Source: Octopus bimaculoides
Lineage: Eukaryota
Direction: 5' to 3'
Assembly: GCF_001194135.2 (NCBI RefSeq)
Contig: NC_068981.1
Coordinates: 155,007,043 to 155,071,042, forward strand
DNA: 64,000 nt
Positions 7,051 through 55,600 of the stretch are shown here, piece after piece (position 1 is the first letter of the stretch; every line of letters begins with the position of its first letter). A program made the position numbers and the translations under genes. The notes under the pieces are model-generated. The model saw nothing but the letters and a program-made list of their open reading frames with translations. It was not told where the DNA came from and searched no databases.

Positions 7051-7567
7051 CATCATAAATATATCATCATCATTGTTTAACATCCATATTCCATGCAGGT
7101 ATGCATAGGACAGTCTAATAGAAAACTGGTGAGCTGCAGGGCTACATTGAAGGGTTTAAGTTGAACAAACTAATCCAAGTATGTTTGTGCATGTGTATGT
7201 GAATCTAAACGATGATACGACTGTCTATATTCTGTGCAACTTCCCTCTACATCCCCTACACTCTTTGAAAACATACATAGCTTTGGTCATAATTTGCTAT
7301 TTTTGTCATAGCATTTCTAAAGAGAGTTGATTGATTACCAAACATCTATATATATTATCAATCATCGGACATACTCAGCATATGCTTTGTTAGTTAAAAC
7401 ACTTGAAATTCATAGACACAAGAGACAACTCAACTTGAATCGAATTCAGGAGTGACGGATACTGACATTTCACCATTTTGACTTGAATCACCAGTCTATG
7501 ACTATATATAAGTAGTGTCATAACTATTTGCTGATGTGCCATTTGCTATATTATATATACATATATA

Positions 7568-8952: not shown

Positions 8953-10229
8953 CACAGACATGCAGGAAATAAATAAAACATATTTAATTTTCAAAATTTC
9001 TGATCTAAGCATCTTCATATGTTTTCAGCAGTGTACAATTTTCAATGTAATTATTCTTTTTCATTCCAGGTGCCATTATATTAAACATTTGTGAAGAGTA
9101 GCCATCCACACACAAAATATTCAGCAGAACTGTCAGATTTTCAAAGAGGTTGTGTTGGTGGGCAATCTGAGGCTGGTCTTAGCCAACAAAAAATTGCCGA
9201 AAATCTTCAAATTCCTCTTTCTACTGTTAATTGAATTATAGTGCAATTCAAAAGCCAAGGAAAAGAATCAACAGATTCTCGTCCCAGCTGACCTGGGCCC
9301 TCGGGAAGGAAGCTTCGCTGTTTGAAGAGAATTGTGGAAAGCAAACCCCATTTGAAGGCTTCTGACATTGCAAAACAGCTAGAAGTTAGTCCAAGAATGT
9401 GTGTTACATATTTGCATAAGTTTGGGTATTATAGACGAGCAGTTAGAAGAAAGCCTTTCCTTCAACCAATTAATATCATGAAAAAAAAGAAATGGGCTAA
9501 AGAGATGTCAGAAAAATCCAGTTCATTTTGGGATAGAGTGATTTTCTCAGATGAATCCAGATTTGCATTCTTTTCAAACAGTGGACATGTTTGGGTCTGG
9601 AGGCTTCCAAATCAAGAATTTGATTTGAAACGACTCCAACCAACTGTAAAATATAGCAGTATCTCTGTAATGGTATGGGAAGCTGTTACCAGCAATGGTC
9701 GTTCTGAGCTGATCGAATGTGTTGGAACCATAAACTCTGAAAAATACATCGAAATACTTAAGCAAGGACTACTTCCAACATATTCACATGATAACATAAC
9801 AAAAAATGAGTTTTTATTCATGGAAGATGGGGTTCCATGCCACACAGCAAAAAGGAATCAACAATGGCTGACTGAAAATAGAATCATAAAGCTTCCTTGG
9901 CCGAGCCAATCTCCTGACATGAACCCAATTGAAAATCTTTGGAGCATACTAGATAGAGCTTTATGAAAAACTCAACAGAAACCTAAATCTAAAGATGAAT
10001 TGTTTCGATTGTTGTGCGAAAAGTGGGCAGAAATTCCACAAGAGACAATTACAAAGCTCATCAGTTCAATGCCAAAAAGAGATTCTGAATTAAAAACTGC
10101 AAAGGGAATATCAACTAAATACTAAAATATGTAGTCCTACCTATCAATTACTTTTCAATTGTTTACTTTGCATATTAAATAAAAGATTTTGAAAATTAAA
10201 GGTGTCTATTTACTTCCTGCATGTCTGTG
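8953..10229 (+). mobile_element. Tc1-family DNA transposon (DD34E), near full length
   Basis: Imperfect TIRs of about 47 bp starting CACAGACATGCAGGAA; TA on the left, CA on the right; transposase inside. Confidence 0.93.
9091..10125 (+). pseudogene. Tc1 transposase pseudogene, 344 codons, three in-frame TGA
   Basis: One frame: [11 protein letters not shown]...[22 protein letters not shown](34 aa)E in DMNPIENLW, C-terminal SMPKR...AKGISTKY. Stops at 9232, 9289, 9964; presumed start reads GTG. Confidence 0.92.
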
Positions 10230-17657: not shown

Positions 17658-17788
17658 NNNNNNNNNNNNNNNNNNNNNNNNNNNNNNNNNNNNNNNNNNN
17701 NNNNNNNNNNNNNNNNNNNNNNNNNNNNNNNNNNNNNNNNNNNNNNNNNNNNNNNNNNNNNNNNNNNNNNNNNNNNNNNNNNNNNNNN
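17658..17788. other. Assembly gap in (TA)n; other gaps at 3315-3324, 28129-28138, 51482-51632
   Basis: N runs. Confidence 1.
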
Positions 17789-25584: not shown

Positions 25585-25695
25585 ATGGGAGATATCAAGC
25601 AGTTTTTATATGCTTGGTGTGGTAAACAGAAGGTCACTCCTGTTTACGAATTCAACACTGGTGGACCGAAACATAAACCTCGGTTCAAATGTGAA
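25585..25695 (+). CDS. DHX9: DHX9 coding exon 1 (dsRBD1 start)
   Basis: Acceptor ttttcag ends 25579, ATG 25585; [37 protein letters not shown]; donor GTAAGT, phase 0. Confidence 0.96.
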
Positions 25696-34600: not shown

Positions 34601-37600
34601 CTCATCCGATATCCTTTATTGTTAACTTGTGTTTCCTAGATAATTTTAAACAATTTGATACTTTCCTATAATTTCAATGTGAATGTAAAAAATGTAAAAA
34701 TTTGGGTTAAAAATTGAAATAATATTAATAATGATTTGTTAAATGCTTTTATTTCTTTTCATTTTAGATTCGGGTTGATAATTTCGACTACATTGGTGTT
34801 GGTAATTCAACAAATAAAAAAGATTCCCAGGCAAATGCTGCTAGGGATTTTGTCCAGTTCTTAGTTCGGCAGGGACAGGTCCAACAATCAGAAGTGCCTA
34901 CTGTAAGTACATATCTTCAGTCTTTTAGAAAACTTTAAAAAATTTTTTTTTTTAATTAACAATATTTGCATCTTAAATATGTCAAGTCTACATTAATATT
35001 CTATTATTGTTAGCATTCTTAGATATGTAGAGTATCTTCACAATTCATTAGGTTGTTTACTAACATCCATCTTCCATGCAGGCATGAATAGGACTGTTGA
35101 CAAGAGCTGGCCAGGTAGAAGACTACCCTAGGCTACTGTGTCTGTTTTGCAGAGTTTTTATGGCTGGATGCCCTTCCTAACACCAACCACTTTGCAGAGT
35201 GGATTGAGTGTTTTTCATGTGACACCAATGTGTTTATAAATAATAATAAATTAATGTCGATTAACATTTAAGAATTTTCACTGCAAGGTCTTCATGTCGA
35301 CTTCAGAATAGCTTTTAAATAGTTCCGTTTAATATATATGAAGAAACTGTTAACTGGAATATATTATGCATTGCTATTTTGTATTTCACCACTTCAAAAT
35401 TGTTATTGTAGGATAAATTAATAGCCATGTGCATTATTCATGATATAAACTAGAAAACATTTAAAAATGAATTTTTAGCTAAAACCATGAATCACAAATA
35501 ATATGTAATAGTAAAGTACAGTTTTATCTATTCCCTTTTGCATTCTTTTATCTTCCAGTTAACTGTTGGCATGGGTGCTGGGACAGCAGAAACTGTGTCT
35601 GGAAATGACACACCTGCAGATGATATGACTGATTCTGGAATATCTTCTGGTGGCTGTAAGTTAATTCTTTCTATACATTTCGCTTTTAGAAAAAACAGTT
35701 TGTTAATGAAGAATTTACTTTAAACAAATATCTTCTTTCTTGATAGCTTTCCCTGGATTAGACGCTAACAGAGATATTCCTGCTTATCAAAGGGGCCCAC
35801 CAATGAGTTATTTGGACCGACTTGCAGAAAAAAGGAAATTGGAAGAAGTAATTATTTTTTCATCATTTTTTCTTGATTTTTGCTGTCAATGTCTACATTA
35901 TTTATTTACCATATTTAGTTGAAGTATTGAGTGAAGAGGTGGTGGTGGTGGACTTGTTTCATAATTGTTCTCTGTTAAGTTTAGGGCAAGTGCAGACTTT
36001 TTTTTTTTTTGGAGTTAAGAAGTTTAAATTTGCGACTACATAGTGCCAGGTTCAATCTGTTATGCTGTATCTTATAGAAATACATTCTACCATAGCCTTG
36101 GGCTGATCAATCCTTGTGAGTGAAATTTGGTAGATGGAAACTGTGGAAATATATCTGAAGGATAAATCCTGTTAGTACCACTGTCTGACCTTTGGGTGCC
36201 TTTAGCAGGTTTGACTGTTTTAAGAATTCAGCACAGTCAGCATTGGTAGCCCTAAAAATGCTGTGGGTTTTATCCTATCTTCTCTGACCAAGCCTAAAAA
36301 AAAAAAAAAAGATGCAAATGTTGTGTGGGCTTTGTTTCCTTTTGTATTTGAATAAAATGGAAGACATAGATCATATTCATATCGACATAATAACTTGAAA
36401 GTAGCTTTTAATGTGGTTATTTATTATAATTAATAGGAAGAAAATATTTCCATGTACAAGAACTTCCAATAATGCTTGGCAAAGAAGAATGGATCATTGA
36501 TAGATAACTATTTCATTTTATAGTAGTCCTGTAGCAATGAAGCAAGAACTAAATGTTATGATATCTTTTGTTACCATATTTCTGTTTAAATACACTTTTG
36601 TTTCAATTAACTCTTAGTAAAAAATTAAATAATTTTGCCATTATTAAGTTGGTTTTTTGTAACTTAGATTTTAACAGAAAGTTTTAATTTAGGTCATCTT
36701 AACCTTTTTGACACTAACCCATCTAAGACTGCCCTCTGGTTCTATATGATGCAAACTCCTCGTTAAAAGTGATCTAAATTAAAAACTTTCAAAATGGACT
36801 GTTAATTTATGTTCCAAATACCAGCATAATAATGATAGTTATTTTTCTGTTCTTCGTTAATTTCAGAATTAATTGAAACAATAGAACTATAGGTTTATCT
36901 TTGATGGGTTGGTATGAAAAGGGTTTAAAAGCCTTTTATAAAAATTAGAATTTTAATGTTATTTTAGAGATGTCAGAAACTAAATATTTAGGAGGTTATA
37001 TACTGACACGGCGCTAGTTGCACAAGCTGATACTCGTTGTTATTTAGAACCAGATTAACTCTGATCAAAAGCCTTTCTAAGTGTGAATATCACTTTCCCC
37101 CCCCCCCTCTGCTCAAGCATATTGACTATAGAACAATGTTGTCTAATATGTCCTTCCTGTTTTTAAGACAGTAAAGTGAGATCTAGCAGGTTGAGCAACC
37201 ACGTAAAGAATCTTTTTTTATTTGCTCATAATGATATTGGACAAGTTTAGATTGTTGATATTTGCAATATCTTTTTCTAAAGATGGGCACATTGCAGTTA
37301 GCTGGAATCTGTGATGGAACTAGTAGATCTTTTTGCATGGAATATAGCACAAATGAACTCAATCTCAGTTTTCGGTGACATGACACTACTAATAATAAAC
37401 TTAATTTACATATGTTAGATATAATTAAGGTATTAGATTTCTCATTACTATTCTGATTTTATTTCTTCAGTCAGAAGATCTTGACTTGAATGCTAGTATT
37501 CACGGCAACTGGACACTGGAAAATGCTAAAAGCAGACTCCATCAATTTCTGCAGCAAAATAAAATACAAGCTGATTATAAATATTCTATGATAGGTCCAG

Positions 37601-40600
37601 ATCATAATCGGTAAGTTAAAATGTTGGATATTGTTTCCTTGTGTTGAATCTCTCTTGACTCCTGAAAATTTTATTACTTTTTCATGAAATTTCGGGTTTT
37701 AAAGTTCAAAGTTCTTAATTCTTAAACAGGTTTTATTTTATGTGTAAACTACAAACTTAGTATAACTTTCTCTACATTGGAATATATTTACATATATTAT
37801 ATAGTAGCTACAAGTCATTCACTAGTATGAGTAAACAGTTAAATGTAATGCTTATTTATAAAAGCAGTAATTTAGTTATTTATAGTAGTTAGTCTTATAT
37901 TTTTTCTATCTGATGAAAATGTAAAACAAAACAGTTGTACTTTTTTCATGTGTTCTCAATTATATAGATATATTTAAAAACTATTAACTTTGTTTTAATT
38001 TTCTCTCTTATAATTACCATTAGCAAATGTTAAGAAATATTAAAATAAACGAAGCTTACCATCACTACAAAATTTGCTCTAATTATGCAACTGTAATTTC
38101 TGGTTTGACTTAGAATTACATTCGTATTATTTTATTTTTAAGTTCCCATATCTCAATGTTTAAAATATTGAGGAATACTATCTTTTGCCAATAATTACTT
38201 TTTTGTTGAGATTTAAGACCAACTCTGTCAAAAAATTCTTTATATCTCCTATCTGTTGGTTTGTAGTCTATACTAGATTAATATTTAGTGTTTATTTTGT
38301 AATTAGTTAATTGGATTTTTTCATGTTTTTTAATAGAAATAATTGTAAAATATTCCTCTGATCATTCTTTGGAATTTTTATTGGTGATTTCTTGTAATGG
38401 AATTTTTAATTTTTTTAAATTTTTTTTTTGTATAAATAAAATATTTTCTTTTAAATGTTTTCAATAAAGTTTGTTTCAGGAAACAATATTTATCTACAAT
38501 GCTTGGGTCTGCTAAAAGAAGATGCATTATCTGCATGAAATATTTGTGAATGTTTGTGTCATTTTGTGTGTTAAGATTATTTAAATTACAAAAAAGTTTA
38601 TGCTCAGTAAGATAGTGCCTTAAGGTACTGCTAATTCTCTAGTTAACTATTTGACTTGTAATTTTGATCAGATTATTTAGGTATAGTTACTGAAAAACAC
38701 TATATTTCATTTAGGAATTTTATTCTTGGCTTTTTTTTTTTTAACTCAATAGCAACTTAATACTTCTGATACGATTGACTTGCTGTTGATGTTTGTTTAA
38801 TCTGTTTATTATATATTTTGTAACAAATTATATTTGTAGTTTTAAAAAGTAAGGCCTAAAACTTAGTTTCTAAAAATGGTGATTAAATTAGTTATAATAG
38901 TTGAATGAATTTAAAAAGAAAAATTTTTTGATCAAAGATTCTCTATTTGAAAGATTGAAAGTTCAGTTTTTAAAAAAAAATTTTCAAAGCTTAGACTAAT
39001 TAAGGTTTTCTTTTATAATTGCTTAAATTTGCAAAATATTTCACCATTAGTCAATTTTGCTTTACAGCTTAAGTAAACAGTTATGAAAAACTGAAAACAA
39101 AACAATTTTATGTTCTACATGTTTGTATAGGGGGTTGGCATAGGTGTAAAGGAATAGAAAGAAAATTTTAAAGAACTGTTATGTGATTACAAATATGAAG
39201 TGGTTCCACTGAATCAGTGTATCAACACTGGTTTCAAATGTGTATAGATTCTTGCACATATAGTTTGACTGTCCTATCTACTTTTCAAAAATGTAATCAG
39301 TTCTGATGAATTTGAATATAATTATTTTCTCTTTTAAAGACATCCCTAAACTAATACATTACAGCCTTTATGTTTATCTTTTACTCATATTCTATTAGTC
39401 TCCTTTATTTTGGTCATCATTAGCAATTACCTTCACACACTTGTGTTAACACTACATCTTGAATAAAATTAACTTGGTGTCTTTTGTTATTGTCTAAGAC
39501 AGGAGTGTTATAATTATAGAATATTAAATTATCACTACTGTAAAAGTAGTGTTAATTTTATGTTCTTTTATATCTGTAAATTAGTGTTAAATTCTCTTGT
39601 TCCAGTAGACTCCTTGTTAAACATTAAATTGATATTACATCCTAGTAACTCAGATGTTTGTATTTTTTAAAGATTTTTTACATTGTTGTTGTTGTTTGTT
39701 CAACTGGTTTAATTGGCTTGTTTCAATACATGCTTTTTTTAATACTATAAATGAATAGATTTAGATTATTTATTCTCTAGCTGTTTGGTAGGTTACAACA
39801 TCTCTAACTTTGGTAAGAAGCATGTCTAATTGTTGTTAGTGATGCTGTTAGTTTTGCTGTTTACACCTTGGTGCTGCTGTGCTGTCTGACCTGATATTTG
39901 CTAGACAACGCCTGCTTGCGTGGCTTTTTTCTATTAAAATGTAATAGAACTGAAATGACTACAGCTCAAATAGCTAAAATGTAATTCGACAGATTTATTG
40001 TTTGTTATACTCCTCTTTATTCATGTTGATAATAAACCAATATGAAGCATTTAATTTATTAAATGTATAGAATATACAAGTGAAAGTTTGTATACTGATA
40101 GGAATAGTAGGCTTTCTGACATTTTCTCAGAATTCTTCTGGCTTTCAGTGTTGCTATAATTTCTATAATTTAACGGGTTTAATAATGTAAGAAAGAAAGG
40201 TATTTTATTCTATTTATTCTATATAATTCAGTATTAACTTTCATTATTTAATAAGATTACAACCATGATTTGCCAGAATGATGGATCAGTGGACTAGCTT
40301 TCTTGGTAGGTGATACTTTAAAGCATTTTGGGTATAATAATGGGTAAAATGTTTTTTTTTTAATGTTGTAATAAATGTTAATTGTAATTTAAGTTGGTAA
40401 TTTACATATGATATGGAATAGTCAAGCCAGTTACTGGTATTGTAATGTAAATCAAAATAGGAATATTTTTTCATAAAGATACATTCTCAATTAATATTAA
40501 TAAGAAAGAGAACATATTGTGTTGCAATTTCCGGTATTAATGTTGACTGAGAACTATATTTCAGTACTTTTGTCACATATATTTGAAACTTTATTACTAC

Positions 40601-43600
40601 TTTAGAAAAAAAATTATACCAAATATAACTATGAAAGCAAGAAAAAATTTTTGAAATGTCAAAAAGGAATTTATTCTGTGTAATGTGAGCTTCCATAGAT
40701 AGATGACATAGTGTAATTATTTCACTCATTAAAGCTAAGTGTTGTGTTTTTGTAAATCAAGGAAAGTAATTTATTTATTAGCAAAATTTAGGAGACATCA
40801 TGAGAATTAGATCATAGAAATATGTTCAGTTTTCATTCTTGATCTTCAGAAATTAATTCTGTTAAGAAAATGTCCATGTTCAGTATGAGGGGAGAATAGA
40901 CGGTAGCAAGGCAATATTTTGCATGTTGTGCACCTTGAATGTTTGAGTAAATGAATTCAGTTATTTTTATAGTAAAAGTCCAAGTAAAACTAAAAATATA
41001 ATTCAAGGAGTATCCAGGGCTTGAGTTAAAAAAAACTACTAATCTTCATTCAAATGTTAAGTTACATAACCTTTGCATGCTGAAAGTATTTTGTTGTATA
41101 AGAATGAAAATTAAGGACTTTCAGTAACTGAAGAACAAGAAGAAATATAAACATATATACACACAGGTAGATAATTTTAATTTTAAAACAGCTTTTGGTT
41201 CTATAAAGTAAAACTGCCAATGTTAGCATGTTCACATTTAATTTTGTACCTTTCACCATAATCTTATATGAGCTTTGCTTCATGGTGAAAAGTTATTTTA
41301 TTTAATTACTAAAAATTCCTGATTATTTTCAAATTGAAATACATAGTGTATGTCAATGACAAATAAGGTAATGAGAGGGTTAAAAAAAGACAACTGAAAA
41401 TGACTGCCTGTTCTAAATGAGAGTTTATTATACAAGTGAAAGTTGCTAAAATGTTTTACTACTGCCTGGTTTGGTCGCGTGACTGAGTAACTGTCTGAGA
41501 AAATAGCTAGTGTTTGCTTTTAGTGGTAATTATACTAAAGGTAAGTCATGGAATATTTGAAAAATATGACTTAAAAAGTTTGCGTTAAGAATGGAATAAG
41601 TAGGATGTGGTTGTATGACCATTTTATAAAAGTATTTTAAATAATTGTTTCTTTTTTCAAGCTAGATCTTATTCCACAAAATGAGATTATTTGTTTTAAT
41701 TTAAGACAAACTGATTTTACATTGACTAGTTATTTTCATTTCAATTTTTAATTTAAAAAAAAAAATTAACATCAACTTCTTGCATTCAATTTGAAAACAA
41801 AAATGCTATATGGATATGTTTAACACCTTTTTTTTTTTAATCAATTCTTTAAAAGCATAGTTTCTAATATATTTTCTTTCCCTCTCGATTCCCTCTTTCT
41901 ATGGTTCTATCAATGCAGTGAGTTTGTCTTTACAGTACTCTTAGGTTGCACAGCTACAAGTGCCTGGACTTGCAACAACAATATTTAATAATCTGTGGCA
42001 CTGAAAGACTGATTTCTTTTTCAGTCGTTATGCCACTGAAACCGACGACAGTATCATTCTTATTAGGTTTGTCCCACAACATTTATCAATTTGGATTATT
42101 TAGTAATCATAGCCAAAGCTCATAAAAGTAATCTGCTGAAAATTTTATTCTGTTTTATTTTTATATGAAAATATTCTGTTTTCTATTTCTTATACTTTTC
42201 TATTTTCTATTTAGACATTTATTTTTCCTAAAATGTTTTTTTTTTTAATGTTTATTATATGCTACTCTGTATACCAAGAACAATATAGAAAATATGTAAT
42301 TGTATATGTTTATAGACTTTAAGAAAACATGCATTCAAATCTAACTCATATTTGTTGCTCATAGGTGCTGTTTTATTTTTCACTATTTGTTCTAATTAAA
42401 TGGTATATTTAAATATTTTCAATGTGTATTAGAAACTTTAAGGTTTTAGTAGTTTCAAAATGAGTTCATGCTATATTTAAACATAAAAGTTGATCATCTT
42501 AAGGATTTTAACTCATGAAGTTTGAACAGTGCCATTAGGAAGTTTATGCTGGTTTTGCACATAAATATTGTGGTGCCACTTAATCATAGTAACAAGAATG
42601 ATAATTATTTCTTTTGGCAAAATACAAGGCCATGTTTGTGCTCAATGTAATTCATTCAATTTCTTGCCTGTATTTGTTAAACCCATTAAAATTCTAATAA
42701 ATTCAAATATTCAGGTACCATATTACATTGGTATTGTTTCCTATCCTTCATGGGCATAAATCCTGAGATTCTTAAGAAAGGAGGAAATTAAATGTTTTAA
42801 AACATTCAAGAATTGAAATCGAGTCACAGGCTCAGCTGGCCAAAAATTTAACTATACTCAATGATTCTGGCCAAATGATAATGACTATGATGACATGAGA
42901 ACAATGGTGCTGCTGTTTCAAAATTGCAGTGCTACCCTGTAAATAGAATTAAGGAATATATATAAAAAACGAATTTCAAGAATTAATTATTTGAAATTCT
43001 AAATTCATTACGTTGATACGTAATAGCTGCTCTTGATCATCTTCCTCTATATTATTGTTTAAATGTTGGGTGTTTACTTAGTAATTGTATCTGCTTTCAA
43101 TTTTTTTCTGTCATTAGTTGATTGAAAAGTTTGTGGTATATTCTGTATCATTTTTACTGGCCTTTCTGCATGAAAATAATTTCAGTTTGGTAAAGATAAT
43201 CTACATTTTAGCACATAGTGCCATCAGCTGAATATGTCCTGTTACTCACTTTTGATAAAACACTAATATTAATCTTCAAATTAGAAATTGACACATTAGA
43301 TTCTATGTCCTGATTTTTTTTTTTTTTACTTTGGTTAACATATCTACAGCAGATTGTTGGAGCTTTGAGTAAAAGAAACAACCAATACATTGTCTGATAT
43401 TTGTTGATAATGTTATAATTGTCTACATTTGTGTTTGTTATGTTAGTGGCAAGTATCTGTCAGATGTATTATTTTTTTAAAAATAAGTATTGCATAATAA
43501 GTATAACTTATTTTTCTGTTGCTGCTAATGCCAGTTATTAGCATTTCCATTTAGTAAGTAGAACATGATTATATCAAGTCTTACCATTGTAATGTTAAAA

Positions 43601-46600
43601 CAATTGTTATATTATCTTGTAATAAATTAAGAATAGGAAAGTTAAATTTCTTTCAGTAGACCTACCTGTTGTTAGCTTCCTTAAAAATTGGAATAATTAC
43701 AATAAAATGCCATTATATATACTTACAGATATTTCTGTTTTATAAACAGTATTTAAGGTATTCATTTTTTATGAAATTTGGTCTTGTTGGTTGTAAAATA
43801 AAAACTTTTAAAGCTGCATCTTGGTTTCAACAGAACTTTTGTTAAGTTTGCAAAAAAAAAACAAAAAAACTGGAAATCAGTTGGGTAAAAATAAAATTTG
43901 TCATTTAATTTTTTTTTTTTTTTTCATATCAGCTATTTAAAATGAGATAGCTATATTTATTGTAGGTCCTTGTGAAGTTTTATGAATAAGCAGTAATAAT
44001 AGAAATAAATAGCTTAATGTATTGGTGTAATAACCGTTGTTGGTTGGTAGATTTTGAAGTCTTATACTATTCTATGATGTATGAAGATGCTATCAATCTG
44101 TTATTATTGACTTGACAAATAAATTACTCTCTTTATGAAGTGATTTCTGGAAAAAAAAAAAAAAAAACATTATTGTATTACATGGAAGGGATTGACTTTG
44201 ATAATTGGAACAGGTAATTGTCCTTTATCCAGTAATTTTTGCAAGTGTCTCTTGAAAATATTGTGTAGATTAATGCAATACTCATACAAAGGATATGCAG
44301 TTGTACAAACCACACACACATACACAAAATAGCTGATATACAGAGCAACAGAGTTGTCTAGTTTTTCTCTATTACTGTGTGTTCCAGATGCAAAAGATCT
44401 TTTGAATGGCGAAGCATTATGAGACTCAACCAACTTGGGAAAATGAACATAAAATTTATGTCTGTGTGTTTGTATTTAATTTACATATGAGCACAAAACC
44501 ATGATGTTGTCTCATAACATACTTTTGTGTAGCAACTAGACATTTTGATTAAAATTTCCTGTTTCTGCAGGTAAATAAATAATAGAAAGCTGTGGAACAA
44601 TGAAAAATAGAAAATTATCAACAAAATAAGATGTTTAATAGTATGAGGGGAAAAGAACTGAGTATGCATGGTATCCAATTTTATAAAATATTTTGTGCAT
44701 ACTTATTTTTAATAGTCCTTTCCTTATCCTTATATTTTTAAACACCTTGTTTTGTCTGTAATTTTCTGTTTTTGCCTTGTTACTTTTATGTTATTATAGT
44801 TGATTATTAGTGTGGATATGACAACCAAAAAATGAAATTTTAATTTGGCCATTGAGTTATTGATTTCATTTGATTTGTATTTCAACTACAACTCTAACAA
44901 AATAAATTGTTGATAACAAATGAGTATGCATCTGAAATATTAAAGATAGTCCTATTATAGTTTGGGGAATGCTTCGAACAACACCACATTGCTTTCTTAC
45001 ATATTCCATTTAAAATTAATATAATTACTTGAAATATTTGGTTATGGAACAAATGAAAGTAATAAGCATTCAGGTTACAAGAAATGGAGGATTTGGCAGG
45101 GCTTTTCCATTGTGCTTAACTGAATTTCACATTTTATATTAATGTAGATTTTTGAAAACAGGATAATGCATGCAAATTCAGAGTTCTGGCAGTGTAAATA
45201 AATTCAAATACTATTATAGGTATTAACTAAAACAGGTATTAAATAGTGCTTGTTTTATTGGCTATGCATGACTAGGATGACGTTATCAATTTTTATAATT
45301 TCAATGTTTTCATAGCCATTTTTTTAGTTATTTATTGTGACCTTTGTTTGCTATTTGTTTAAAAGGATTTGACCTTATTTGGTATTTTCATCTCAACTAA
45401 AATAAGATTTATCTGTTGAAAATTGACAAAGAAATCTAAAAACATTAACCAAGTGAGTGGTATCACTCTCATGGTAATGGATGTTCATTTGTTAATAAGT
45501 CTGATACTGTCGTTGTTTGACCCTTGTCCTTTTACCATGCAACTTAACTTACCATCATGGCGTTTAACCCTGAAAATTTCATTGCAAGAAACAGCTTTCT
45601 ACATGAAACATTTGAAGTGTGCAGCTCTTATTCTATAACATTAAGCTGGCATTGTGCATGCTGTGGTTTCCAGACATAATTTAATTCCCTTAATGCTATT
45701 TTAAGTCTCAAAAATTTTCCTTTAATTATTGAAATGATTTGAGCTGTTATAAGAATGTCTTAAGATTTGTTCCAGTAATCACTTAATGATTAGAAATTCA
45801 TAAAGTTATTTTGTATCAATTCTTTGTGTCTGGAATATGGTTCAATATCTGTTTAGTAAATCTATGAATGATGATTAACTATACTATATATTATACTTTA
45901 CCATTGTGTTTTCCAGAATAAAAGGAGATTGTTTTATGCTACATTATCTGTAATATCAACAGATCTGTCATATTAGATCTATTTATATTAAAGATAAATT
46001 CTCTCTCAAAAAAAAAAAAAACCCTTTTTTTGGTGATTTGTAAAAGGATAAAGGAATGTATATTGCAGCTTAAAAGAAAAAAATCTGTAGAGTTTGAAGT
46101 GCATTCTTCTGAGATTTTTTTTTTATGTTGAGTTGATTTCTTGCCATAAAATTTAATTTTATCTTAGTCAATTTTCTTACCTACAGAAAATCTAAGATAA
46201 AAGAAAAAAAATTGTTCAATTATTTGTATGCACTAAATGCATACATAAATATTAAATATTTAAGATGGTAAAGTTGCAATTCTTCACTGATTGTTTGTCC
46301 TGTATTCCTGCTGTAGTGGGATGGATTTTTTATGTCCCCCACTAGAGCAGTAAAGGGCTTTAGAAGGGTTAATATATTTGTTTGTCTGTCATGCAGCAGG
46401 CACTCATAAAGTTGTTGCAGTCGTTGCCTCTCGTTCCTCCTCAACAGAATCTTACCATTGTGGCACTTGTATGCTGTGCAACCCAACTGCGTGTCTTCCT
46501 TGCTAGTTAAAGACAGCCCTGTATCTTCTCAGGTAAGTTATTTCCTGCTCTGCAGAAAACTGCAGCCCTTTTATTTCAGCATTATAGTGTACTACAAAGA

Positions 46601-49600
46601 AAACCAGCTGGAAAAAGAATAAAATAATGCAGTCATATTTATATATATTCTCTTCTGCAAAGATTCTTACTGTTTGAAAATGTTCTTCTATCACAGCAGT
46701 ACAGTCACTTAGACAATTCCACTACTTTTTTTTTTTCCGCCCCTTCTTTGTATTAGCTGATATTAAATATTTTATTTTCAAATCACAAAGATGGATAGCT
46801 CTGAAAAGAAGCATTTATCACAATAATACCTTCTATTGAAATAACTGTTTTTAATTCATTTTTATCATCTTTTTTTTTCTATTTTTTTAAGTCTGAAGTT
46901 AGTTTCATCTAGTTACTTTTTAAAAGAATTAATATTGCTTTCATCTAAACGTTGACAAAAACTGAAATATTTATTGGGCTGTTACACCTGCTTTGGTGAA
47001 GTTGAATGTTGGAAGTGAGTTTTAAAAGTGAAATTGTAATTTCTCCTCCCTTATGCTTTAGATGTAGTCTATTGATATGCTAAATTCTAACATTAATTGT
47101 ATCTTTAGGAGATCAAATATAAAGATCTTTGTTTAAGTACTCTGACAGTTTATGCAAAGGACTCAGCAGGTTTTTGGATAAACTATTATTGCAGCATTAA
47201 TATCAGTCTTACTAGAAATATTCTATTGCTATTTGGAGCAATAATTTTGATTTTTCATCTTTATATATATCATACAACTTTTCAAAATTTAAGTACAAGA
47301 AATTTCTTCTTAGACTCCTTAAATTACAAGTCATTATAAACATTTTCATTTAGGAACCAGCCTTGAAACATTTTGAACGGTTTCTATAAACATAAATTTG
47401 TCACTAAAATACATCAGTTTTATATTTGTTACGGTTTATCATTAACTTTATTCAACAGTCTTATTTCACTTCCTCCAAACAAACTACTGAAAATATTGTA
47501 TGTTTAATCAGTTGGTCTCAAGCAGATGACATGTGTGTTTTGCTTGTATGTATGTATTTATGTGAGTGAGTGAAGTGTATAACTGGTGGAATACATTGTT
47601 ATGAGGAGTTTTTAAATTACTAACCTAATCTCAAATTGTACAAAGAAACATTAGAATTATTTCACTAAGTAAGAGTAAAATATTGTTTAAGGACCCTGCA
47701 AATGGAATGGTCAATTTATTCTGGTGTCCACCTGTTAGCTTGATAAACTTAGATTTAAATATTGATGAAATAATTCTTTGAAATAAGGTAAATATTATTT
47801 AGTTTGTTTTTCTGCAACAAAATGCAAAATAATTTGAAAATATCTTTTAATGATGCCTAGGATTTTTTTAAATATGTAAATGGTTTTCATTCTGTTTCAT
47901 TTTAAATGAAGAGATGGAAAATGCATTTAAAGCTCCTAGTTATTGAATACTTGAGAAGTAATGTTTCCTATATCAGTTCTTGTGTAATCACAAATGTTAT
48001 TCTTTACTGCCTCCACCAATAATTTTTACTCTGAACCCTAAAGTAAGCCACGGTGTGATCATTCAACCAGCTAGAAATATCCCCTATATAACATTCTACC
48101 TAAGTAATGAAAGGACACATTAGATAATGTACCCCAAGATAACTTTGATATAGTTGGCATTAGGAATAATATAACGCTATTAAGAGGTTTTGCTCTAAAT
48201 ATTTGATGACTTGCTCGTCTAGAAAAATACCATTCAAAGTAATGAATCTAAGAGCCTGGCTACTTGGCTCATTTTAGGAAAATGACGTTTGAAATCCTTT
48301 CTGTAACATAATTATTTTATAGTAGAATATTATCTTTTTATTTTTTATTTTATTTCTGGCAATAGTCCAGATGAAAAGAGTTGATGTAACATATTAGTGC
48401 TTATTAGGAGAAAAATCAATTCACTTGAAGCGCGTTTTATATTTGATTTTTTTTTTTAGCTATTTTTGCATTAAGTGTTGTAAGAATTATTTGATGGCTA
48501 GGTTGTAGCCGAATAGTAACTACTCAATTACTGGTTTCGATAATTGTTAAGTTTACGAGGTTGTAATGAAATTTGATTAGTGCTTATATTTTTAAATAAA
48601 TGCTTTCAGTTGTTATTTATTAATCATCTCTAATCAAGCAGACTGCTTATGGTAGTGGTTTGATAGCAACAATGGCTAAACATATTAGGTCTACTCTTTT
48701 TTAGTGATAGGGATTGCTGTGTGAATGACTTCTTTGCCTTCAGACTGAAAGAAAGGTGTGGAAGACAAAGCTTTTAGAGTTCTCATTTCATAGCATTACG
48801 ACATACAAATACATAATAATGTATTGTCATTCCATTTGTTCTCTAATGCTAAACAAAGTACTTATTTATTGACTAGATAGATTGAAGACTATTTAATTTG
48901 ACCTGGTATGTGTTGTTTTTGGTCTAAGCAGGTTTTAACGATTTATAAATATTCAATCTTTAGTATCAAGGGCGATAAATATTAGAAATACCAAGAGGAG
49001 TTTTCTCCCTAACTCATAGGATTGGGTCATCCTATAAATAATGTGGCTTTTTCAATTGCATGAAAAGTTGGAGGGGGACAGGATAAACTACCTGCATCAA
49101 CTTGCTATAAAAGCAAGTAGTAATTTTACCTTGTCCTTATTCTTAGTGTAAATTTTGAAGAGCTGTTCGATTTTAACAGTTACTTTTTTAAAGCTATAAT
49201 GGAAGTGACAAAGGTGCATATTCAGCCTATTTTGCTTTATGAGTTCAATAAAGTTAACGCACCAGAAAGTGCAGGGAATATTAATGCAGTATATGGGGAT
49301 TGAACAATAAGTGTAAGCCAGTGTCAATGGTGCTTCCAGAAATTCAGAACCAGAAACTACAGCCTGGCAGATGAGCCTCGTCCTGGAAAATCTGTGGAGT
49401 TTGATGAGGATATCCTGCAAATCTTGGAACAAAATCCTATCATAACTGTTGAGGAACTAGCAGAGTAGCTTGAATTTGGTCGTTCAACCACTGATCAACA
49501 TCTGTGTGTCATTGGAAGAATCAGCAAATTGGATCAGTGGGTTCCTCACAAACTTTCCGAGTCTAATCACATGGAGAGACTGAATGTATGCTCTTCTTTG

Positions 49601-52600
49601 CTGTCATGTCTCACAAATGAACCTTTTTTGGACCAAATAGTGGACAGGTGACAAGTACTGAAAACAGTGGGAAAAGGAGGAACACCAGCACCCCAGGCTA
49701 AAATTCTTCACCCACATAAGGTGTTATCTGTTTGGTGGGATATGAAAGGTTTAGTCCACCTTGAACTTTTAAACCCAGACCAAATGATAACAAAGGACAT
49801 GTACTGTAAGCAGCTTGAGTCGGCGCTAGAAGTAAAATGACCATCTTTGGTTCCAAGATGAAAAGTGAATGCTTGGTCACATACAGCAAGGATGACATTC
49901 CAAAGGCTGGAGCAATTTGAATGGGGAACTATGCCCCACCCACCATATTCGCCAGATATTACTTCATCTGATTATCATTTATTCCGCAGTCTTCAAAACC
50001 ATTTGGCTGGAAAAAATATGAATTCTGTAGATGAGGTCAGAACAGTACTGGGGGAGTATTTTTCGTCATGGACAAGTGAATTTTGGAAGAGCATTGTAAA
50101 AAATGAAGGAGAGTATATTTTAGAGTAAAAAAAGAATATTATCTTAATTTTGAAAAGTAAAAGAAAACCACATTATTTATGGAGAGCCTATGTATTTTAC
50201 TGTTTTTAATGTGTGCTTTGGGGAAAAGAAGACTATATATTAAGTGTGGTATGGATCTATACATCAGGAACCTAGCACATTAAATTTACTAGAATTTTTT
50301 TTTTTGTTTTTACTGGCCCCTGACAATAGATGGTGGGGTGTTGTCTTGTGTGTGTATGTACCTGGTATATGAAGCTGTAGAGAGCATCTGCATTTAGTGC
50401 TATGAATTGGTTTAGTGAATAGTCTCTGTGTTTGAATGTTTTGATACGCTTTAGATTTTTAAGAGAAAATATAGAAAGGCTGGTCTTATTTAAACTCCAA
50501 TCTTTGGTGTGAGAGTGCAGAACTTTTAGCACTTGGAAGTGTAATCAAGTTTATGGATTTGTACAGCTTTCAGAACCAATGTTTTGGTGCAGTCCTCTGA
50601 GATCTTCCAGATTTTAGTCACTGCTTTTTCATGTTTTTATTTGTCCATTTGATACATGGAAGCAATTTAGGACTGTTGTATTGCTTCCATTTCATCAGTG
50701 AAGTTGGTATTATAAAGTGCCTTTCTAGAAGAGGAATTTTATTTAAAAACTAAGGACAAGTATCTTTTGACTGGACCAAAATTGGTGTTTTCTAAATATT
50801 CTCAAGATTCCATCCTGCTAGTAGTTTGCAAATTGTCATAGCATTTCATTAAAATAATCCTGTAATAGTAAACGTTACTTATAATTTGTATGTGTCACAT
50901 GGATTCTGATTAGGTATTGCATTACCTTGTACATCTACATTGCGATGTGCTATAAGGCTCATAAGGAATGTGTTGTTTCTATCAAATCAATGTCTTTCTG
51001 TAGGTTTTTGACACCATTGAGACTCTTAATTACTATTGATATTTTAATGTTATTGTTTGTAAAGATGGTAGTTCTGAGTAAGATTTAAATAAACTATTAT
51101 TCAAGAAAGAATTCAAAAACGATATAATCAGTGATTTACTTGCTTTAAAGATAGGTCAGCCAAACCTTTTTATTTTTCCTTTAGCATCAATGTGGCCTTT
51201 TGTTTTATTTTTTATGTAGAAAATTTTAAATTCTATAAACCCTTTTGAAGACTTGTCCATGTTAGCAGTGTTTTTGAATCCTTTAAATTTTCATAATCAA
51301 AACCATACTCATTCTAAAATAACATTTTAATGTGTGTATGTATATGCACATATGTCTATGGGTGTGGTGTTTGTATGTAAATTGTTGTGTGTGTGTGTGT
51401 ATGTGTACTTGCATGTGTACAGGTGGCCCATAAATGGCTTAATATATAATGTTATAGTAATGCAATATATATATATATATANNNNNNNNNNNNNNNNNNN
51501 NNNNNNNNNNNNNNNNNNNNNNNNNNNNNNNNNNNNNNNNNNNNNNNNNNNNNNNNNNNNNNNNNNNNNNNNNNNNNNNNNNNNNNNNNNNNNNNNNNNN
51601 NNNNNNNNNNNNNNNNNNNNNNNNNNNNNNNNATATATATTCATGCATTCTTGCTTTCATTGTTCTTGTTATATTAAATTTGGATCTTGGATAGATCTTT
51701 TTCTTTTGTTATTAACATTATTTTATTGTTCTTTTGTAGGAGCTTCATTGCCGAGATGAAAATCTATGTCAAATCTATTGGGAAGCGTAAGTATTTTAAA
51801 AGAATTAAAAATGTTTCTTTTATTAATGTTATATATTCTTATGTTTTATAGACTGACTCAAAATGTAACAACACTATACAATTTTTTTCCAAAATGTCTA
51901 AGCAGCTAAAATCTTTAATGACCATTTGATACAAAAAGAAAACCATTCTCATGTATGATTATTTATAACTACTTCATAACTTTCATTTGATTTTCTTTCT
52001 CTCTCTCTCATGTTAGATGTATCATCACGAGAGCATGGTTCAAATAAACAAGTGGCTTCCAAATCATGTGCTTTGTCTTTGGTACGCCAACTCTATCACA
52101 TGAATGTTATTGAAGCTTACACCGGTTTGAAGAAAAAGAAAGATGCTGATAAGGTATGTTCTTAAGGAATTTTATCACTATAGTAAAGCCTTTCCTTGAG
52201 TGCATTTTGGAATAATTATGTGGAGAGTTGTAGTTGTACCACTGGTGTGTGAACAGTACCTATATATTATGTATCACATATTCTTTTGGTTCTTGCATCA
52301 TAGAACATCTATGGGAAAAATTTCAAGATGGTGCGAGTGATTACTTATAATTGTCTCTTTCAATGTCGTTATTGCTTGCAAACCCAACATACACTGTTGT
52401 GCATTGTCACAGAGAGCCAACAGAATGCTTTAAGTCTTGATAAAATACCTTTATTTCATGTTTTTATAAAGTAATCATTACACTCAAAACTATTTGTAAA
52501 TATTTTTATCATTGGGTGTAAACAAAGCAATGCACTGTGGGATGGTGGTAAAAAAAAGGGAAGGATTTGAAATGCATGTGTAGATGTTTACTAATTCAAG

Positions 52601-55600
52601 TAGGGGCAGGTCAAGTGAAATTGTTTGAATTTGAATGTTGTTTGTGGAAGAAATGGGAGTCCCATGGTGTTGTACAAGCTCACAGTTGGAAAAAAAAAAT
52701 AATGGTGGGAATGACATAGAGAATTGAATGATGGACTACAGGCTTAAGATATCTGTACTTATTTTGTCAATGAATGCTGACCAGTTTCTCATATATATAT
52801 ATATATATATATAACCAATTTCGATCACTGGCACCCGTGCCACAGTAAAGTGATTCTAAAATCCTCGTAGGAAAAGCAGTAATGTTGGTTTTAAGAAGGC
52901 AAAAAGCAATGAGTTCTAGTTAAGAGATGCTGGCACTTCTGAATATCAAAATAGTCCAGTGTTGTGACACAGGCTGTGTTCATTGGAGTTGTATGATGCT
53001 TGTGTATAAACAGTGATAATGCATGGTAGTGAGACATTGAAACTCTAAGCAGGGAATGTGCATAGGTTGGAGAGGAATGAAGCGAACATGATCTGCTGGA
53101 TATAGAATGTCTGTGTATGACATGAACTGATAAAAAAACTGGGTATAAAAGTAATCAGTTGTAGTGTGCAAATGAGATGGTTACACTATTATATAGAGGT
53201 AATGTGTAATGAATTATTCACGTGGGTGAATAAGTACCAGGAGATGTGTGGGAGAGGAAGACGGGGACAGAAGTGGTAGAGGTTGATATCCGGATACTCA
53301 ATCATACAAAGGTGATGGCAAAGGAATGTGACAAGTGATGGGATACCATGTTAAGGGCCTATCCAGCTCATGCAAGTATAGTAAAAATGAACTTAAAATG
53401 TTAATTGTGTTATAATCTACTAGTTCTGTGTGTATATTGTGTGGTTGAGAATTTAATGATAATAATACAGGTATTTGAACCAAGTGTGCTTTTACTTCAT
53501 ATCATTTACAGATACCACCATTTGAAGTTTCCATTAGTCCTGAATTGGAAACTAGTCTGGATGAAGCTTTGCATGCATGGAATATCGAGCCTATTCAAGT
53601 AGTAAGTTGTTTATTTATTATTAAGTAATAAATTTACGGTGTTTTAACTTGATGCCTTTTATATAACATTTTCTCATTAACTATTTAATTTCTATCTACA
53701 TTTTAAAGCCTGCTGAACTTTCCCCGGAGCCATTCTCACTAGTAACTCATACTCAACTGGATGAATTTGTTCCTGCACCTAAACGTCCTCAGCCAGGTGT
53801 GGTTTCTTGGTGTCCACCACAACCCAACTGGAACCCTTGGACAAATTGTAACATCGATGAAGGTCCTTTGGCGCATGTGAGTAAAACATTTTATTGTGTG
53901 TGCAAGAGAGTGCCATGTGTCTCCAAAATAAAAGAATATAAGTTATGATATGAAAGGAATGGCAGAAAGCTGAATGTAGTGCGTGGAATTCTTGGACTTC
54001 TTGTTCTTGTGGAAATAACCTCTTTACTGGCATGTCTCTGTTTTTTTTTTAACTATTATATATACATAAAAGGAACTGCTTTGCCTGAGCAGGTTTTTCA
54101 ACGAAGGGTTTGATCTTTATGTAATTGTAAATCCAAAAAGATGCATTTGTAAAATTGGTTGTAAAGAATTAAAATATAACCTAAAAATGTATAATATAGT
54201 GATGCAGTATTAACTGCCTCTTGGATGTTGTTTACTGTCAAGCTAACTCTGATCAGGTGAATCCAGTTGAGATCATCCTGTCATTTTATGAGTATCTAGG
54301 ACTAAGGCTTGAAAGTTATTGGTTGGTTATATAGATGAAATGGACTGCTTCCTAATTCTATGTTCAGATGCTTTCTGTATTGACTTCACATTCCAATTTT
54401 CTATAATAGGTAATGTAAAACACTAAACTTTTTTTTCACCGATAAAAGTTTACTTATTACCATTAATATAAAAAAAAAGTATGTTGAAACAATAGATCCT
54501 TCCAAAAATTGCCTTTCTTTTCGTCAAACTGGAGTCAATAAAAGTACCTGTCAATTTTTAGGGGCAGATTTAATTAACTCCTCCTGTCTATTCATATGAC
54601 TTTGCATCAGTTAGAATTAATTATTATTATTTATTTTCTGTGATTATTATTGTTATTTAGGCCTCAATGGAACAAATCAGTCAGGATGTGTACCGGTCAC
54701 TAGAAGAACAGAGAGCCAATGATAGAGATCTTCAGGCTGTAAGTCCTCATTGCTTAATTGTATATGTTACTATATTTTTATGTCTGAGACCGTCTATATC
54801 TTTATTGCTAATAATTTTGGCAATAAAGTTGTATGTTAAATAATATTTATTTTGAAAATATTAATAGTAGATACATTTTCTTTGAATTAAGTTTTAGTTC
54901 AGTTATTTTGAGCAATGATACCTTTTTTGGTTCATGTTGCCATGAATCAATTTAAGCAGAATCAAAACCAATGAACTTGTGTTAGTGTAGCATTTTAATT
55001 TTACTATCATATTTTCCATACTCTTCATATTTCCTTGTGAGAGTAATACATGTGAATATTTTTTCCATATTGTAACAGTAGTATCCAGCATGAGGAAAGA
55101 ATTAGAAAATTATTATTTTAGCAGGTGTTTGTTGAATGAAGCATGGATGATCTATTCCAGTATGACTAAAATTAAATGTCAATATACCATTATGATATTT
55201 TCTTTTTTTTTTATTTTAAACATCTTTCATTGAATTTTTTCTGTTTTCAGATGCTCCATGATCGAAGCAAGTTACCTATCAATCAATCTAGAGATCATAT
55301 TGTACACGTTATCAAAACTTCCCCGGTTGTTCTCATAAGAGGAGAAACTGGATGCGGTAAAACAACACAGGTAATTGACTTTGTTGTTTTATTTGTGAAA
55401 GAAATTAAAAAATTACTTGCAAAATGTGCGAGTAAAAGTAAATATGCAGGTTTAAGTGCTCCTATTGCTCACATGATTAAATCACAAGTCAAACTTAAAA
55501 GATAGATACTGAAAGATGAATGATAGTCTTTTTAGATATTGTGTCTTAAAAAATAAAAAAAAATAAGGTTGTGGCTGAAAGGCTTTTGAATGGGTCAGAC

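What the first reader, a model, noticed from the sequence alone, without database searches (positions are those of the whole stretch)
37611..51739. TE-poor 14-kb intron inside dsRBD2 with a cryptic exon set where every combination gives a premature stop
Seen: from about 37.6 to 48 kb I find none of the SINE, MITE or RTE copies that recur every 1-2 kb in intron 1 and upstream. Instead there are small GC-richer islands around three cassette candidates (32, 17, 85 nt). Each alone frameshifts to TGA 51757 or TAA 52045. The frame-restoring pairs (32+85, 17+85) hit TAG inside the 85-nt exon, 32+17 hits TAA 52045, and all three hit TAA inside the 85-nt exon. Established (from recall): human DHX9 has a stress-regulated poison exon 6A in what appears to be this intron, and long retained introns can use multiple decoy exons. 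Inference: a conserved or convergent poison/decoy system tuning DHX9 level in a heavily RNA-editing lineage.
Basis: partly seen in the sequence, partly recalled or inferred. Interest (0 to 1): 0.75.

Follow-up and report, generated by a model that had tools for sequence, protein, structure and literature searches.

The report
Candidate poison exon in octopod DHX9
A long, repeat-poor intron splitting the second RNA-binding domain of an octopus-like DHX9 helicase gene holds one very exon-like 85-base element that would truncate the protein if spliced in, at the same intron where human DHX9 has a proven "poison exon", but its use here is predicted only and the other two proposed mini-exons look like chance.

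Summary
The interval is the GT..AG intron (37611-51739) that splits dsRBD2 of a DHX9/RNA helicase A gene on the + strand. The N gap (51482-51632) lies inside the intron in a (TA)n tract, 107 nt upstream of exon B, and touches no coding frame.

The 32- and 17-nt candidates have chance-level splice signals.

The 85-nt candidate (46448-46532) is different. It sits in the top GC island and is the only acceptor/donor pair in the window, on either strand, with both scores at least 8 (Markov null p about 0.008).

No window repeat family occurs in the intron, but a mariner remnant lies at about 49.2-50.4 kb.

Published primer sequences show that human poison exon 6A lies in the orthologous intron, at the same codon and phase. 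Transcript contigs from two other animals carry frame-shifting inserts (74 and 55 nt) at this junction, with no sequence similarity to the octopod element.

Verdict: a plausible, untested poison exon and a new member of a known kind. The three-exon "set" is not supported.

The parts
37471..37610 (+). DHX9 exon A: N-terminal half of dsRBD2 (SEDLDLNAS...MIGPDHN-R). It ends with the first two bases (CG) of the Arg codon. It corresponds to human exon 6.
   Evidence: tblastn; PDB match E = 4e-48; human primers
37611..51739 (+). Phase-2 GT..AG intron splitting dsRBD2. It is 14,129 nt including 151 N, with about 27% GC up to 48 kb. It contains none of the window's recurrent repeat families.
   Evidence: Orthologous introns are 2.26-7.6 kb in four other taxa
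39781..39812 (+). The acceptor is weak (0.3) and the donor modest (2.5). It is chance-level.
41524..41540 (+). The acceptor is poor (-2.9) and the donor good (7.6). It is chance-level and implausibly short.
46256..46632 (+). The strongest GC island of the intron up to 48 kb (up to 49% GC against a mean of 27%). It surrounds the 85-nt candidate.
   Evidence: No Pfam, Rfam or homologue hits. Folding z-score is -1.6
46448..46532 (+). The 85-nt candidate cassette (poison) exon: gcctctcgttcctcctcaacag|AATC...CTCAG|gtaagt. It is open in the incoming frame. Inclusion shifts the frame and ends at TAA 52045-52047. A moderate upstream acceptor at 46397 (score 4.84) and a poor one at 46421 (-5.41) would give 136- and 112-nt versions, all equal to 1 mod 3.
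49200..50400 (+). Degraded mariner-type DNA transposon. It has a Transposase_1 fragment at 49667-49837 and a further mariner-like ORF at 49862-50125. It accounts for the second GC-rich block.
51482..51632 (.). Assembly gap inside (TG)n/(TA)n microsatellite. It is intronic, 107 nt upstream of exon B.
51740..51786 (+). DHX9 exon B (47 nt, (R)[15 protein letters not shown]). It holds TGA 51757-51759, which is reached in the frame set by the 32- or 17-nt insert. It corresponds to human exon 7.
52017..52155 (+). DHX9 exon C ([12 protein letters not shown]...). TAA 52045-52047 lies in the +1 frame of the conserved GSNK codons and is the predicted premature stop after 85-nt inclusion.
   Evidence: The same TCA-AAT-AAA stop is used in L018

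Best explanation
The window carries an octopod DHX9 (RNA helicase A) gene on the + strand. Interval 37611-51739 is the ancient phase-2 intron that splits dsRBD2 between GPDHN-R and SFIAEM. Here it has grown to 14 kb of AT-rich DNA that is largely free of recognisable repeats, with one old mariner copy and a microsatellite that broke the assembly.

Inside it, one element (46448-46532, 85 nt) most likely acts as a cassette "poison" exon. When the spliceosome includes it between exons A and B, the reading frame shifts by +1. Translation reads 28 new codons, then exon B and the start of exon C out of frame, and stops at TAA 52045-52047. More than 15 exon junctions lie downstream within the window. 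The mRNA would then be degraded by nonsense-mediated decay, or at most yield dsRBD1 plus half of dsRBD2, so inclusion lowers DHX9 output.

Shown: the gene, the intron, its orthology to human intron 6, the splice-signal strength of the element, and the frame consequences. Inferred: that the exon is actually used, that NMD follows, and that inclusion is regulated. The 32- and 17-nt candidates and the "all combinations are poisoned" pattern are chance features of an AT-rich intron.
For: Gene and intron.

The 85-nt element has acceptor 8.5 and donor 9.1, against real-exon medians of 4.5 and 3.6. It is the only acceptor/donor pair with both scores at least 8 in 64 kb on both strands. The best pair in other non-coding parts of the window, on either strand, scores 6.84. 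A first-order Markov null of the intron reaches 8.54 or more in 3 of 400 simulations. No candidate in four orthologous introns exceeds 4.8. The element lies in the highest GC island of the intron, and its 46% GC is at or above that of real exons. The frame consequence was computed.

Precedent at the same intron: human exon 6A is validated as NMD-coupled (PMC4741636, PMC7072589), and the junction sequences are. Transcript contig L010 includes a 74-nt frame-shifting cassette that maps, flanked by AG and GTGAGT, inside the orthologous intron of L004. Transcript contig L018 has a 55-nt frame-shifting insert at the same junction.
Against: There is no transcript evidence for this species. No octopod transcript or ORF containing exon A exists in the searchable collections.

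No conservation could be shown. The island has no similarity to any fetched locus. ORFs across 43-49 kb have no relatives in the protein database, so close octopods could not be compared.

My splice scores come from a simple generic weight matrix, not a trained cephalopod model. The one verified cassette (L004) has a weak acceptor (2.8), so splice-signal strength is neither necessary nor sufficient.

Strong pseudo-exons that are never spliced do occur in long introns.

The contigs from other taxa are subject to ascertainment bias, because premature stops create the short complete ORFs that the database indexes. L010 also carries a second unproductive event, so it may reflect splicing noise.
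Confidence: 0.5

Rival explanations
1. The 85-nt element is a chance pseudo-exon that is never, or only negligibly, spliced. The intron is simply a large AT-rich intron whose lack of repeats reflects the patchy distribution of insertions.
For: "Poisoning" is the null outcome for 95% of AG..GT intervals. There is no expression or conservation evidence. Another 7.7-kb stretch (17.8-25.6 kb) has only 1% repeat cover. The intron does contain a TE. The site was chosen after the fact.
Against: Both splice signals exceed those of every real exon in the window. A pair this strong arises in fewer than 1% of composition-matched simulations and nowhere else on either strand. It coincides with the top GC island. 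Three other taxa use the same intron for unproductive splicing.
Confidence: 0.33
2. The GC island is something other than a DHX9 cassette. It could be an exon of an unannotated same-strand transcript (a lncRNA, nested gene or alternative terminal exon). It could be an exonised fragment of an old mobile element. It could be a regulatory element that only happens to carry splice-like motifs.
For: The island (about 380 nt) is larger than the exon. It contains a 13-nt inverted repeat (46308-46350). All five AGs upstream of the exon are in one phase, which could be a relic of coding sequence. A 102-codon open frame runs on the minus strand (46223-46528).
Against: There are no Pfam, Rfam or tRNA hits. 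No copies occur elsewhere in the window or in other loci. No homologous ORFs exist in 5.8 billion proteins. No partner exons of comparable strength lie nearby. The minus-strand open frame is not unusual for this intron (101 and 119 codons occur elsewhere).
Confidence: 0.1
3. One reading: three cooperating cryptic exons (32, 17 and 85 nt) form a decoy or poison system, selected so that every combination is unproductive.
For: The arithmetic is correct. Two of the three candidates touch GC-rich islands.
Against: The 32- and 17-nt candidates have acceptor scores of 0.3 and -2.9 and do not stand out among the 54 and 44 same-length AG..GT intervals. The combinatorial property is expected by chance. 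A 17-nt exon would need special definition signals, and none is seen.
Confidence: 0.05

Closest known systems
Human DHX9 poison exon 6A (transcript NR_033302; Fidaleo et al. 2015, PMC4741636; Palombo et al. 2020, PMC7072589)
   Same: It is in the same gene and the orthologous intron, entered after the same codon position (human AG|G, octopod CG|G of the Arg in GPDHNR). It is a cassette that brings in a premature stop. The predicted effect is the same: less DHX9.
   Different: No sequence similarity was detectable, although only the published primer sequences of 6A could be compared. Human 6A carries its own in-exon stop, whereas the octopod 85-nt element is open and acts by frameshift. Human inclusion, UPF1 dependence and regulation by Pol II speed, hnRNPM and SRSF3 were shown experimentally. 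Nothing has been shown for the octopod.
74/83-nt cassette in the orthologous intron of an unidentified distant relative (transcript L010 from ERR10659120; genomic L004-L007 from SRR273628xx)
   Same: It is in the same intron and is flanked by AG and GTGAGT. It shifts the frame (lengths equal 2 mod 3). It is GC-richer than its intron (43% against 31%).
   Different: It lies about 280 nt upstream of exon B in a 2.26-kb intron, not 5.2 kb upstream in a 14-kb intron. Its acceptor is weak. It has no sequence similarity to the window. It has transcript evidence, which the window element lacks.
Ultraconserved poison exons of SR-protein and other RNA-binding-protein genes (Lareau et al. 2007, cited in PMC7072589)
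   Same: This is the same logic: an RNA-binding protein gene carries a normally skipped cassette that couples splicing to NMD to set protein level.
   Different: Those exons are defined by extreme sequence conservation and, for several, by proven autoregulation. Here conservation across distant taxa was tested and not found, and autoregulation was not tested.

Membership tests
NMD-coupled cassette (poison) exon | An internal sequence bounded by a functional 3' splice site (polypyrimidine tract plus AG) and a functional 5' splice site | tested here: met
   In silico only. Acceptor 8.5 and donor 9.1 (CAG|GTAAGT), the best pair in the window.
NMD-coupled cassette (poison) exon | Inclusion introduces a premature stop upstream of later exon junctions | tested here: met
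   Inclusion leads to TAA 52045-52047 in exon C, with more than 15 coding exons downstream in the window.
NMD-coupled cassette (poison) exon | The exon is actually included in some transcripts | not testable with these tools
   No octopod transcripts are present in the searchable collections.
NMD-coupled cassette (poison) exon | The inclusion isoform is stabilised when NMD or translation is blocked | not testable with these tools
   This needs an experiment.
Orthologue of human DHX9 exon 6A | Located in the orthologous intron | tested here: met
   Primer junction sequences compared with window 37610|51740.
Orthologue of human DHX9 exon 6A | Sequence homology to exon 6A | tested here: inconclusive
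   Only four published primer sequences were available. None matches the intron with 4 or fewer mismatches.
Conserved or ultraconserved poison exon | The exon and its flanks are conserved well above the intron background across species | tested here: not met
   No similarity to orthologous introns of L004, L011, L015 and L016 or to the upstream part of L001. These taxa are distant, and close octopods could not be obtained.
Decoy-exon-mediated intron retention | Intron retained in polyadenylated RNA, with cryptic exons engaging the spliceosome unproductively | not testable with these tools
   No RNA data.
DHX9 / RNA helicase A gene | Two N-terminal dsRBDs followed by a DExH helicase core, in this order | tested here: met
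   tblastn maps dsRBD1, dsRBD2 and helicase motifs (GCGKTTQ, DEIHER, and onward) from 25.6 to 63.8 kb. PDB RNA helicase A and MLE match at E = 1e-42 to 1e-48.

The most novel reading that the evidence does not exclude
The intron that splits dsRBD2 of DHX9 is a bilaterian-wide site of unproductive splicing. Under this reading, animals as far apart as humans (exon 6A), an unidentified relative of cephalopods (74-nt cassette), another invertebrate (55-nt insert) and octopods (85-nt element) each keep a frame-shifting cassette in this one intron, while its sequence turns over completely. That would imply long-term selection for a dosage valve on DHX9 at a fixed gene position rather than on a fixed sequence.
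Probability: 0.2. Interest if true: 0.6.

Novelty: new member of a known kind. Interest (0 to 1): 0.4.

Why it matters
DHX9 unwinds double-stranded RNA and works alongside ADAR editing, which is unusually extensive in coleoid cephalopods. How its level is set there is unknown. If the 85-nt element is a working poison exon, it would be a simple handle for measuring or manipulating DHX9 dosage in octopus.

Together with human 6A and the two transcript contigs found here, it would also be an example of positional rather than sequence conservation of a poison exon, which alignment-based screens for conserved poison exons would miss.

If it is not used, the finding is an ordinary long intron. The useful lesson is then that "every combination is poisoned" carries no information in AT-rich introns.

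Tried and rejected
1. Conservation in close octopods. The only close relative reachable (L002) is a 3-kb contig that starts at the gap. Two protein-database searches with ORFs from the island and from 43-49 kb returned nothing, so this route is closed with these tools.

2. Homology between the island and the L004/L010 cassette, four other orthologous introns and the human 6A primers, using blastn at word size 7, nhmmer, local alignment against shuffles and fuzzy matching. All results were at noise level.

3. Non-coding RNA or repeat explanations for the island: Rfam at E <= 1, ARAGORN, TRF, inverted repeats and RNA folding. Nothing was found, and the folding z-score was -1.6.

4. A recursive-splicing site was rejected, because the acceptor is followed by AATCTT, not GTAAGT.

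6. P0231, which looked like a fourth non-canonical junction, is read-through of a GC-AG intron (R|QV = G|GCAAGT) and was discarded.

7. The taxa of L004/L010 and L018 could not be identified. Per-exon amino-acid identity of L010 to the window is about 65-94%, against 45-88% for human.

Identity claims rest.
Full report
WHAT THE REGION IS. The window is AT-rich eukaryotic DNA with four N runs. A tblastn scan places a DHX9/RNA helicase A gene on the + strand. The gene runs from a start codon at 25585 ([14 protein letters not shown]...) to at least 63.8 kb.

The exon at 37471-37610 encodes [46 protein letters not shown] and ends with CG. The next coding exon is 51740-51786 (G AGC TTC ATT GCC GAG ATG ..., 47 nt, donor GTAAGT at 51787), followed by 52017-52155. 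Joined, they read ...GPDHNR|[27 protein letters not shown]... with no stop. This peptide matches dsRBD2 of RNA helicase A and Drosophila MLE in the PDB at E = 1e-42 to 4e-48. The finding's coordinates are therefore exactly a GT..AG, phase-2 intron of 14,129 nt inside dsRBD2.

THE ASSEMBLY GAP. The 151 Ns at 51482-51632 are intronic, 107 nt upstream of exon B. They have (TA)n on the left and atatatat on the right, with (TG)n just upstream. The polypyrimidine tract, the acceptor and exon B are contiguous on the right side.

The nearest relative I could fetch is L002, a Logan contig that is 81.6% identical over 51640-52812 including introns. It aligns from the first base after the gap, and it also begins in TA-rich sequence. 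The gap is therefore a microsatellite break. It does not affect any reading frame, but its content and length are unknown.

REPEAT CONTENT. A self-comparison of the window finds 27 repeated segments: 17 upstream of 17.6 kb, five in the 9-kb intron 25.7-34.7 kb, two in 34.9-37.5 kb, two after 52 kb and one more near 24.7 kb. None lies between 36144 and 56777. A more sensitive search of the intron against the rest of the window also finds nothing. None of the 22 stop-to-stop ORFs of at least 60 codons in 37.6-49.1 kb hits a transposon domain.

The GC-rich block at 49.2-50.4 kb is a degraded mariner element, with Transposase_1 at 49667-49837 (E = 9.5e-14). The intron as a whole is not TE-free, and a species repeat library was not available. 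Orthologous introns in the other taxa I could fetch are 2.26 kb (L004), 5.65 kb (L011), 5.96 kb (L016), 7.57 kb (L015) and more than 6.3 kb (L001), so this one is the longest seen.

THE THREE CANDIDATES. Scanning for AG..GT intervals of 32, 17 and 85 nt and ranking them by a simple splice weight matrix gave 39781-39812, 41524-41540 and 46448-46532.
- The 32- or 17-nt insert alone leads to TGA 51757.
- The 85-nt insert alone, or 32+17, leads to TAA 52045.
- The 32+85 or 17+85 combination leads to TAG 46504.
- All three together lead to TAA 46508.

The pattern carries no information. Of 7,996 AG..GT intervals of 15-200 nt in this intron, all 5,350 with a length not divisible by three and 86% of the other 2,646 give a premature stop within the next two exons.

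The 32- and 17-nt candidates have acceptor scores of 0.3 and -2.9, against a median of 4.5 for the real exons of this gene. They are two among 54 and 44 same-length intervals. I treat them as chance.

THE 85-NT ELEMENT IS DIFFERENT. Its context is gcctctcgttcctcctcaacag|AATCTT...TCTCAG|gtaagt. The acceptor scores 8.5 and the donor 9.1, above every real exon in the window.
- It is the only acceptor/donor pair 25-300 nt apart with both scores at least 8 on either strand of the 64-kb window. At a threshold of 7, only two other pairs appear; both lie within the DHX9 exon cluster at 60-64 kb and may be real exons, though I did not check them.
- The best pair in the other non-coding parts of the window, on both strands, scores 6.84. 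A first-order Markov model of the intron reaches 8.54 in 3 of 400 simulations.
- No candidate in four orthologous introns exceeds 4.8.
- The element lies in the highest GC island of 37.6-48 kb (46256-46632, up to 49% GC against a mean of 27%).
- It is open in the incoming frame ([29 protein letters not shown]). Its inclusion shifts the frame so that translation ends at TAA 52045-52047, in the +1 frame of the conserved GSNK codons.
- A moderate upstream acceptor at 46397 (score 4.84) and a poor one at 46421 (-5.41) would give 136- and 112-nt versions, also equal to 1 mod 3. The 136-nt version has its own TAA.
- Rfam, tRNA, tandem-repeat, inverted-repeat and folding analyses give no alternative identity for the island.

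COMPARISON WITH THE HUMAN POISON EXON. Human exon 6A is an experimentally validated, UPF1-sensitive cassette between exons 6 and 7. It is induced by UV or etoposide through slower Pol II and repressed by hnRNPM and SRSF3 (PMC4741636, PMC7072589).

The papers' primer tables settle its position. DHX9_E6jE6AF is GTCCTGATCACAACAG|GTGG, which encodes (G)PDHN-R and then runs into exon 6A. DHX9_E6FjE7R reverse-complemented is CAG|GAGCTTTATTGCAGAAATG, which encodes N-R|SFIAEM. Human exon 6 therefore ends after the second base of the same Arg codon as window 37610. The four published 6A and intron-6 primer sequences have no match in the octopod intron with 4 or fewer mismatches, which is a weak test.

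NEW EVIDENCE FROM OTHER ANIMALS. Among the database hits to the dsRBD2 peptide, P0013 reads ...GPDHNR|KRLNQHLSWSCVTLVGRIYWTLLKGAS*. Its contig L010 (Logan, ERR10659120) is a spliced DHX9 transcript. Compared with the genomic contigs L004-L007 (94-100% identical in the coding exons, 92% in the 49-nt exon B), it carries 74 extra bases between exon A and exon B. These bases map inside the orthologous 2.26-kb intron, flanked by ...ttgatcag| and |gtgagt. The cassette is 83 nt in L004 and 74 nt in L010; both lengths equal 2 mod 3.

L010 also uses an acceptor 4 nt downstream of the in-frame one at an upstream junction. It is therefore doubly unproductive and may partly reflect splicing noise.

I then screened 253 proteins from the two searches for what follows the GPDHxR motif. 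Genomic read-through must continue with a T-initial codon, and canonical splicing continues with SF[IV]AE. The screen found 105 read-throughs, 24 proteins that end at the motif, 19 canonical junctions, one GC-AG read-through and two true exceptions. The exceptions are P0013 and P0124. The contig of P0124 is L018, a JGI transcript from another invertebrate. It has 55 extra bases at the same junction, bounded by neither GT nor AG, so the insert is not a retained intron. Translation ends at the same TCA-AAT-AAA stop.

These contigs show that unproductive splicing through this intron occurs outside vertebrates. The screen is biased, however, because premature stops create the short complete ORFs that the database indexes. 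The taxa are also unidentified and distant: L010 has about 65-94% amino-acid identity per exon to the window, against 45-88% for human. Neither insert resembles the octopod island.

WHAT COULD NOT BE DONE. No octopod transcript or exon-A ORF is present in the collections, so use of the 85-nt element is untested. ORFs from the island and from 43-49 kb have no relatives in the protein database, so conservation among close octopods is untested.

VERDICT.
- There is one strong candidate poison exon, not a set of three.
- It lies in the intron orthologous to human intron 6.
- There is precedent for unproductive splicing of this intron in two further animals.
- There is no sequence conservation and no expression evidence in this species.
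- I put the probability that the 85-nt element is a real, spliced cassette at about one half.
- If real, it is a new member of a known kind. The broader idea that the position rather than the sequence of a DHX9 poison exon is conserved is the most interesting reading left open.

Noticed in passing
L010:1-470 against L004:268-3280: The transcript contig with the 74-nt cassette also uses an acceptor 4 nt downstream of the in-frame one (L004 601 instead of 597, ttag|atag|). This is a second frame-shifting event in the same contig.
   Followed up: partly
L018:380-520: A JGI transcript contig from an unidentified invertebrate has a 55-nt insert between the GPDHSR exon and the (T)FVAEM exon of its DHX9. 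Translation stops at the same TCA-AAT-AAA (GSNK) site that the octopod 85-nt frame would use. Without the genome, a cassette cannot be told from an alternative 3' splice site.
   Followed up: partly
window 46395-46447: All five AG dinucleotides upstream of the 85-nt element give exon lengths of 1 mod 3 (136, 133, 121, 112, 85). The chance of this is about 1 in 81. It could be coincidence or a relic of periodicity.
   Followed up: no
window 46308-46350: A near-perfect 13-nt inverted repeat (CTGCTGTAGTGGG ... CCCACTAGAGCAG) forms a hairpin about 100 nt upstream of the candidate exon. The folding z-score of the whole island is not significant.
   Followed up: partly
window 9292-9963 (+): A Tc1-type transposase ORF of 224 codons (DDE_3 E = 1.7e-12, HTH_Tnp_Tc3_2) lies upstream of the gene.
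   Followed up: yes
window 8061-8321 and 60299-60559; also 1-60: A 261-nt inverted pair, 96% complementary, has one copy upstream of the gene and one inside a late DHX9 intron. The first 60 bases of the window are a third partial copy. This is a young dispersed repeat. ORFs in the 60.4-60.8 kb copy look like the tail of a retroelement but have no Pfam hit.
   Followed up: partly
window 3251-3314 / 3325-3388 and 4342-4469 / 7219-7347: Exact 64-nt copies flank the 10-N gap at 3315-3324, which is probably an assembly artefact at the gap edges. A second repeat of about 128 nt recurs 2.9 kb apart, with an 83-nt core that is 100% identical (4342-4424 = 7219-7301).
   Followed up: no
window 56102-56554 (-): A 151-codon open frame in a DHX9 intron has an acidic serine-rich stretch and a ...[21 protein letters not shown]... 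motif that recalls piggyBac-derived proteins. It has no Pfam hit.
   Followed up: partly
window about 17000-64000: AT skew turns and stays negative (T over A on the + strand) from about 17 kb to the end of the window. This fits transcription of the + strand starting near the gap at 17658-17788, some 8 kb upstream of the start codon, and suggests one or more 5'UTR exons there.
   Followed up: no
L001:17852-19039: In one distant taxon, the helicase-core region that is split into about seven exons in the window (58.3-61.4 kb) is a single 395-codon ORF. An RVT_1 retroelement lies in the intron after exon B. The gene structure differs from the octopod's.
   Followed up: no
P0007, P0198 (proteins): Vertebrate-like DHX9 transcript ORFs carry other aberrations just downstream of exon 7. 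P0007 has a 1-nt frameshift after GRRI. In P0198 the exon-8 segment is replaced by VCVIYILM. Unproductive or odd isoforms around dsRBD2 seem common in assembled contigs.
   Followed up: no
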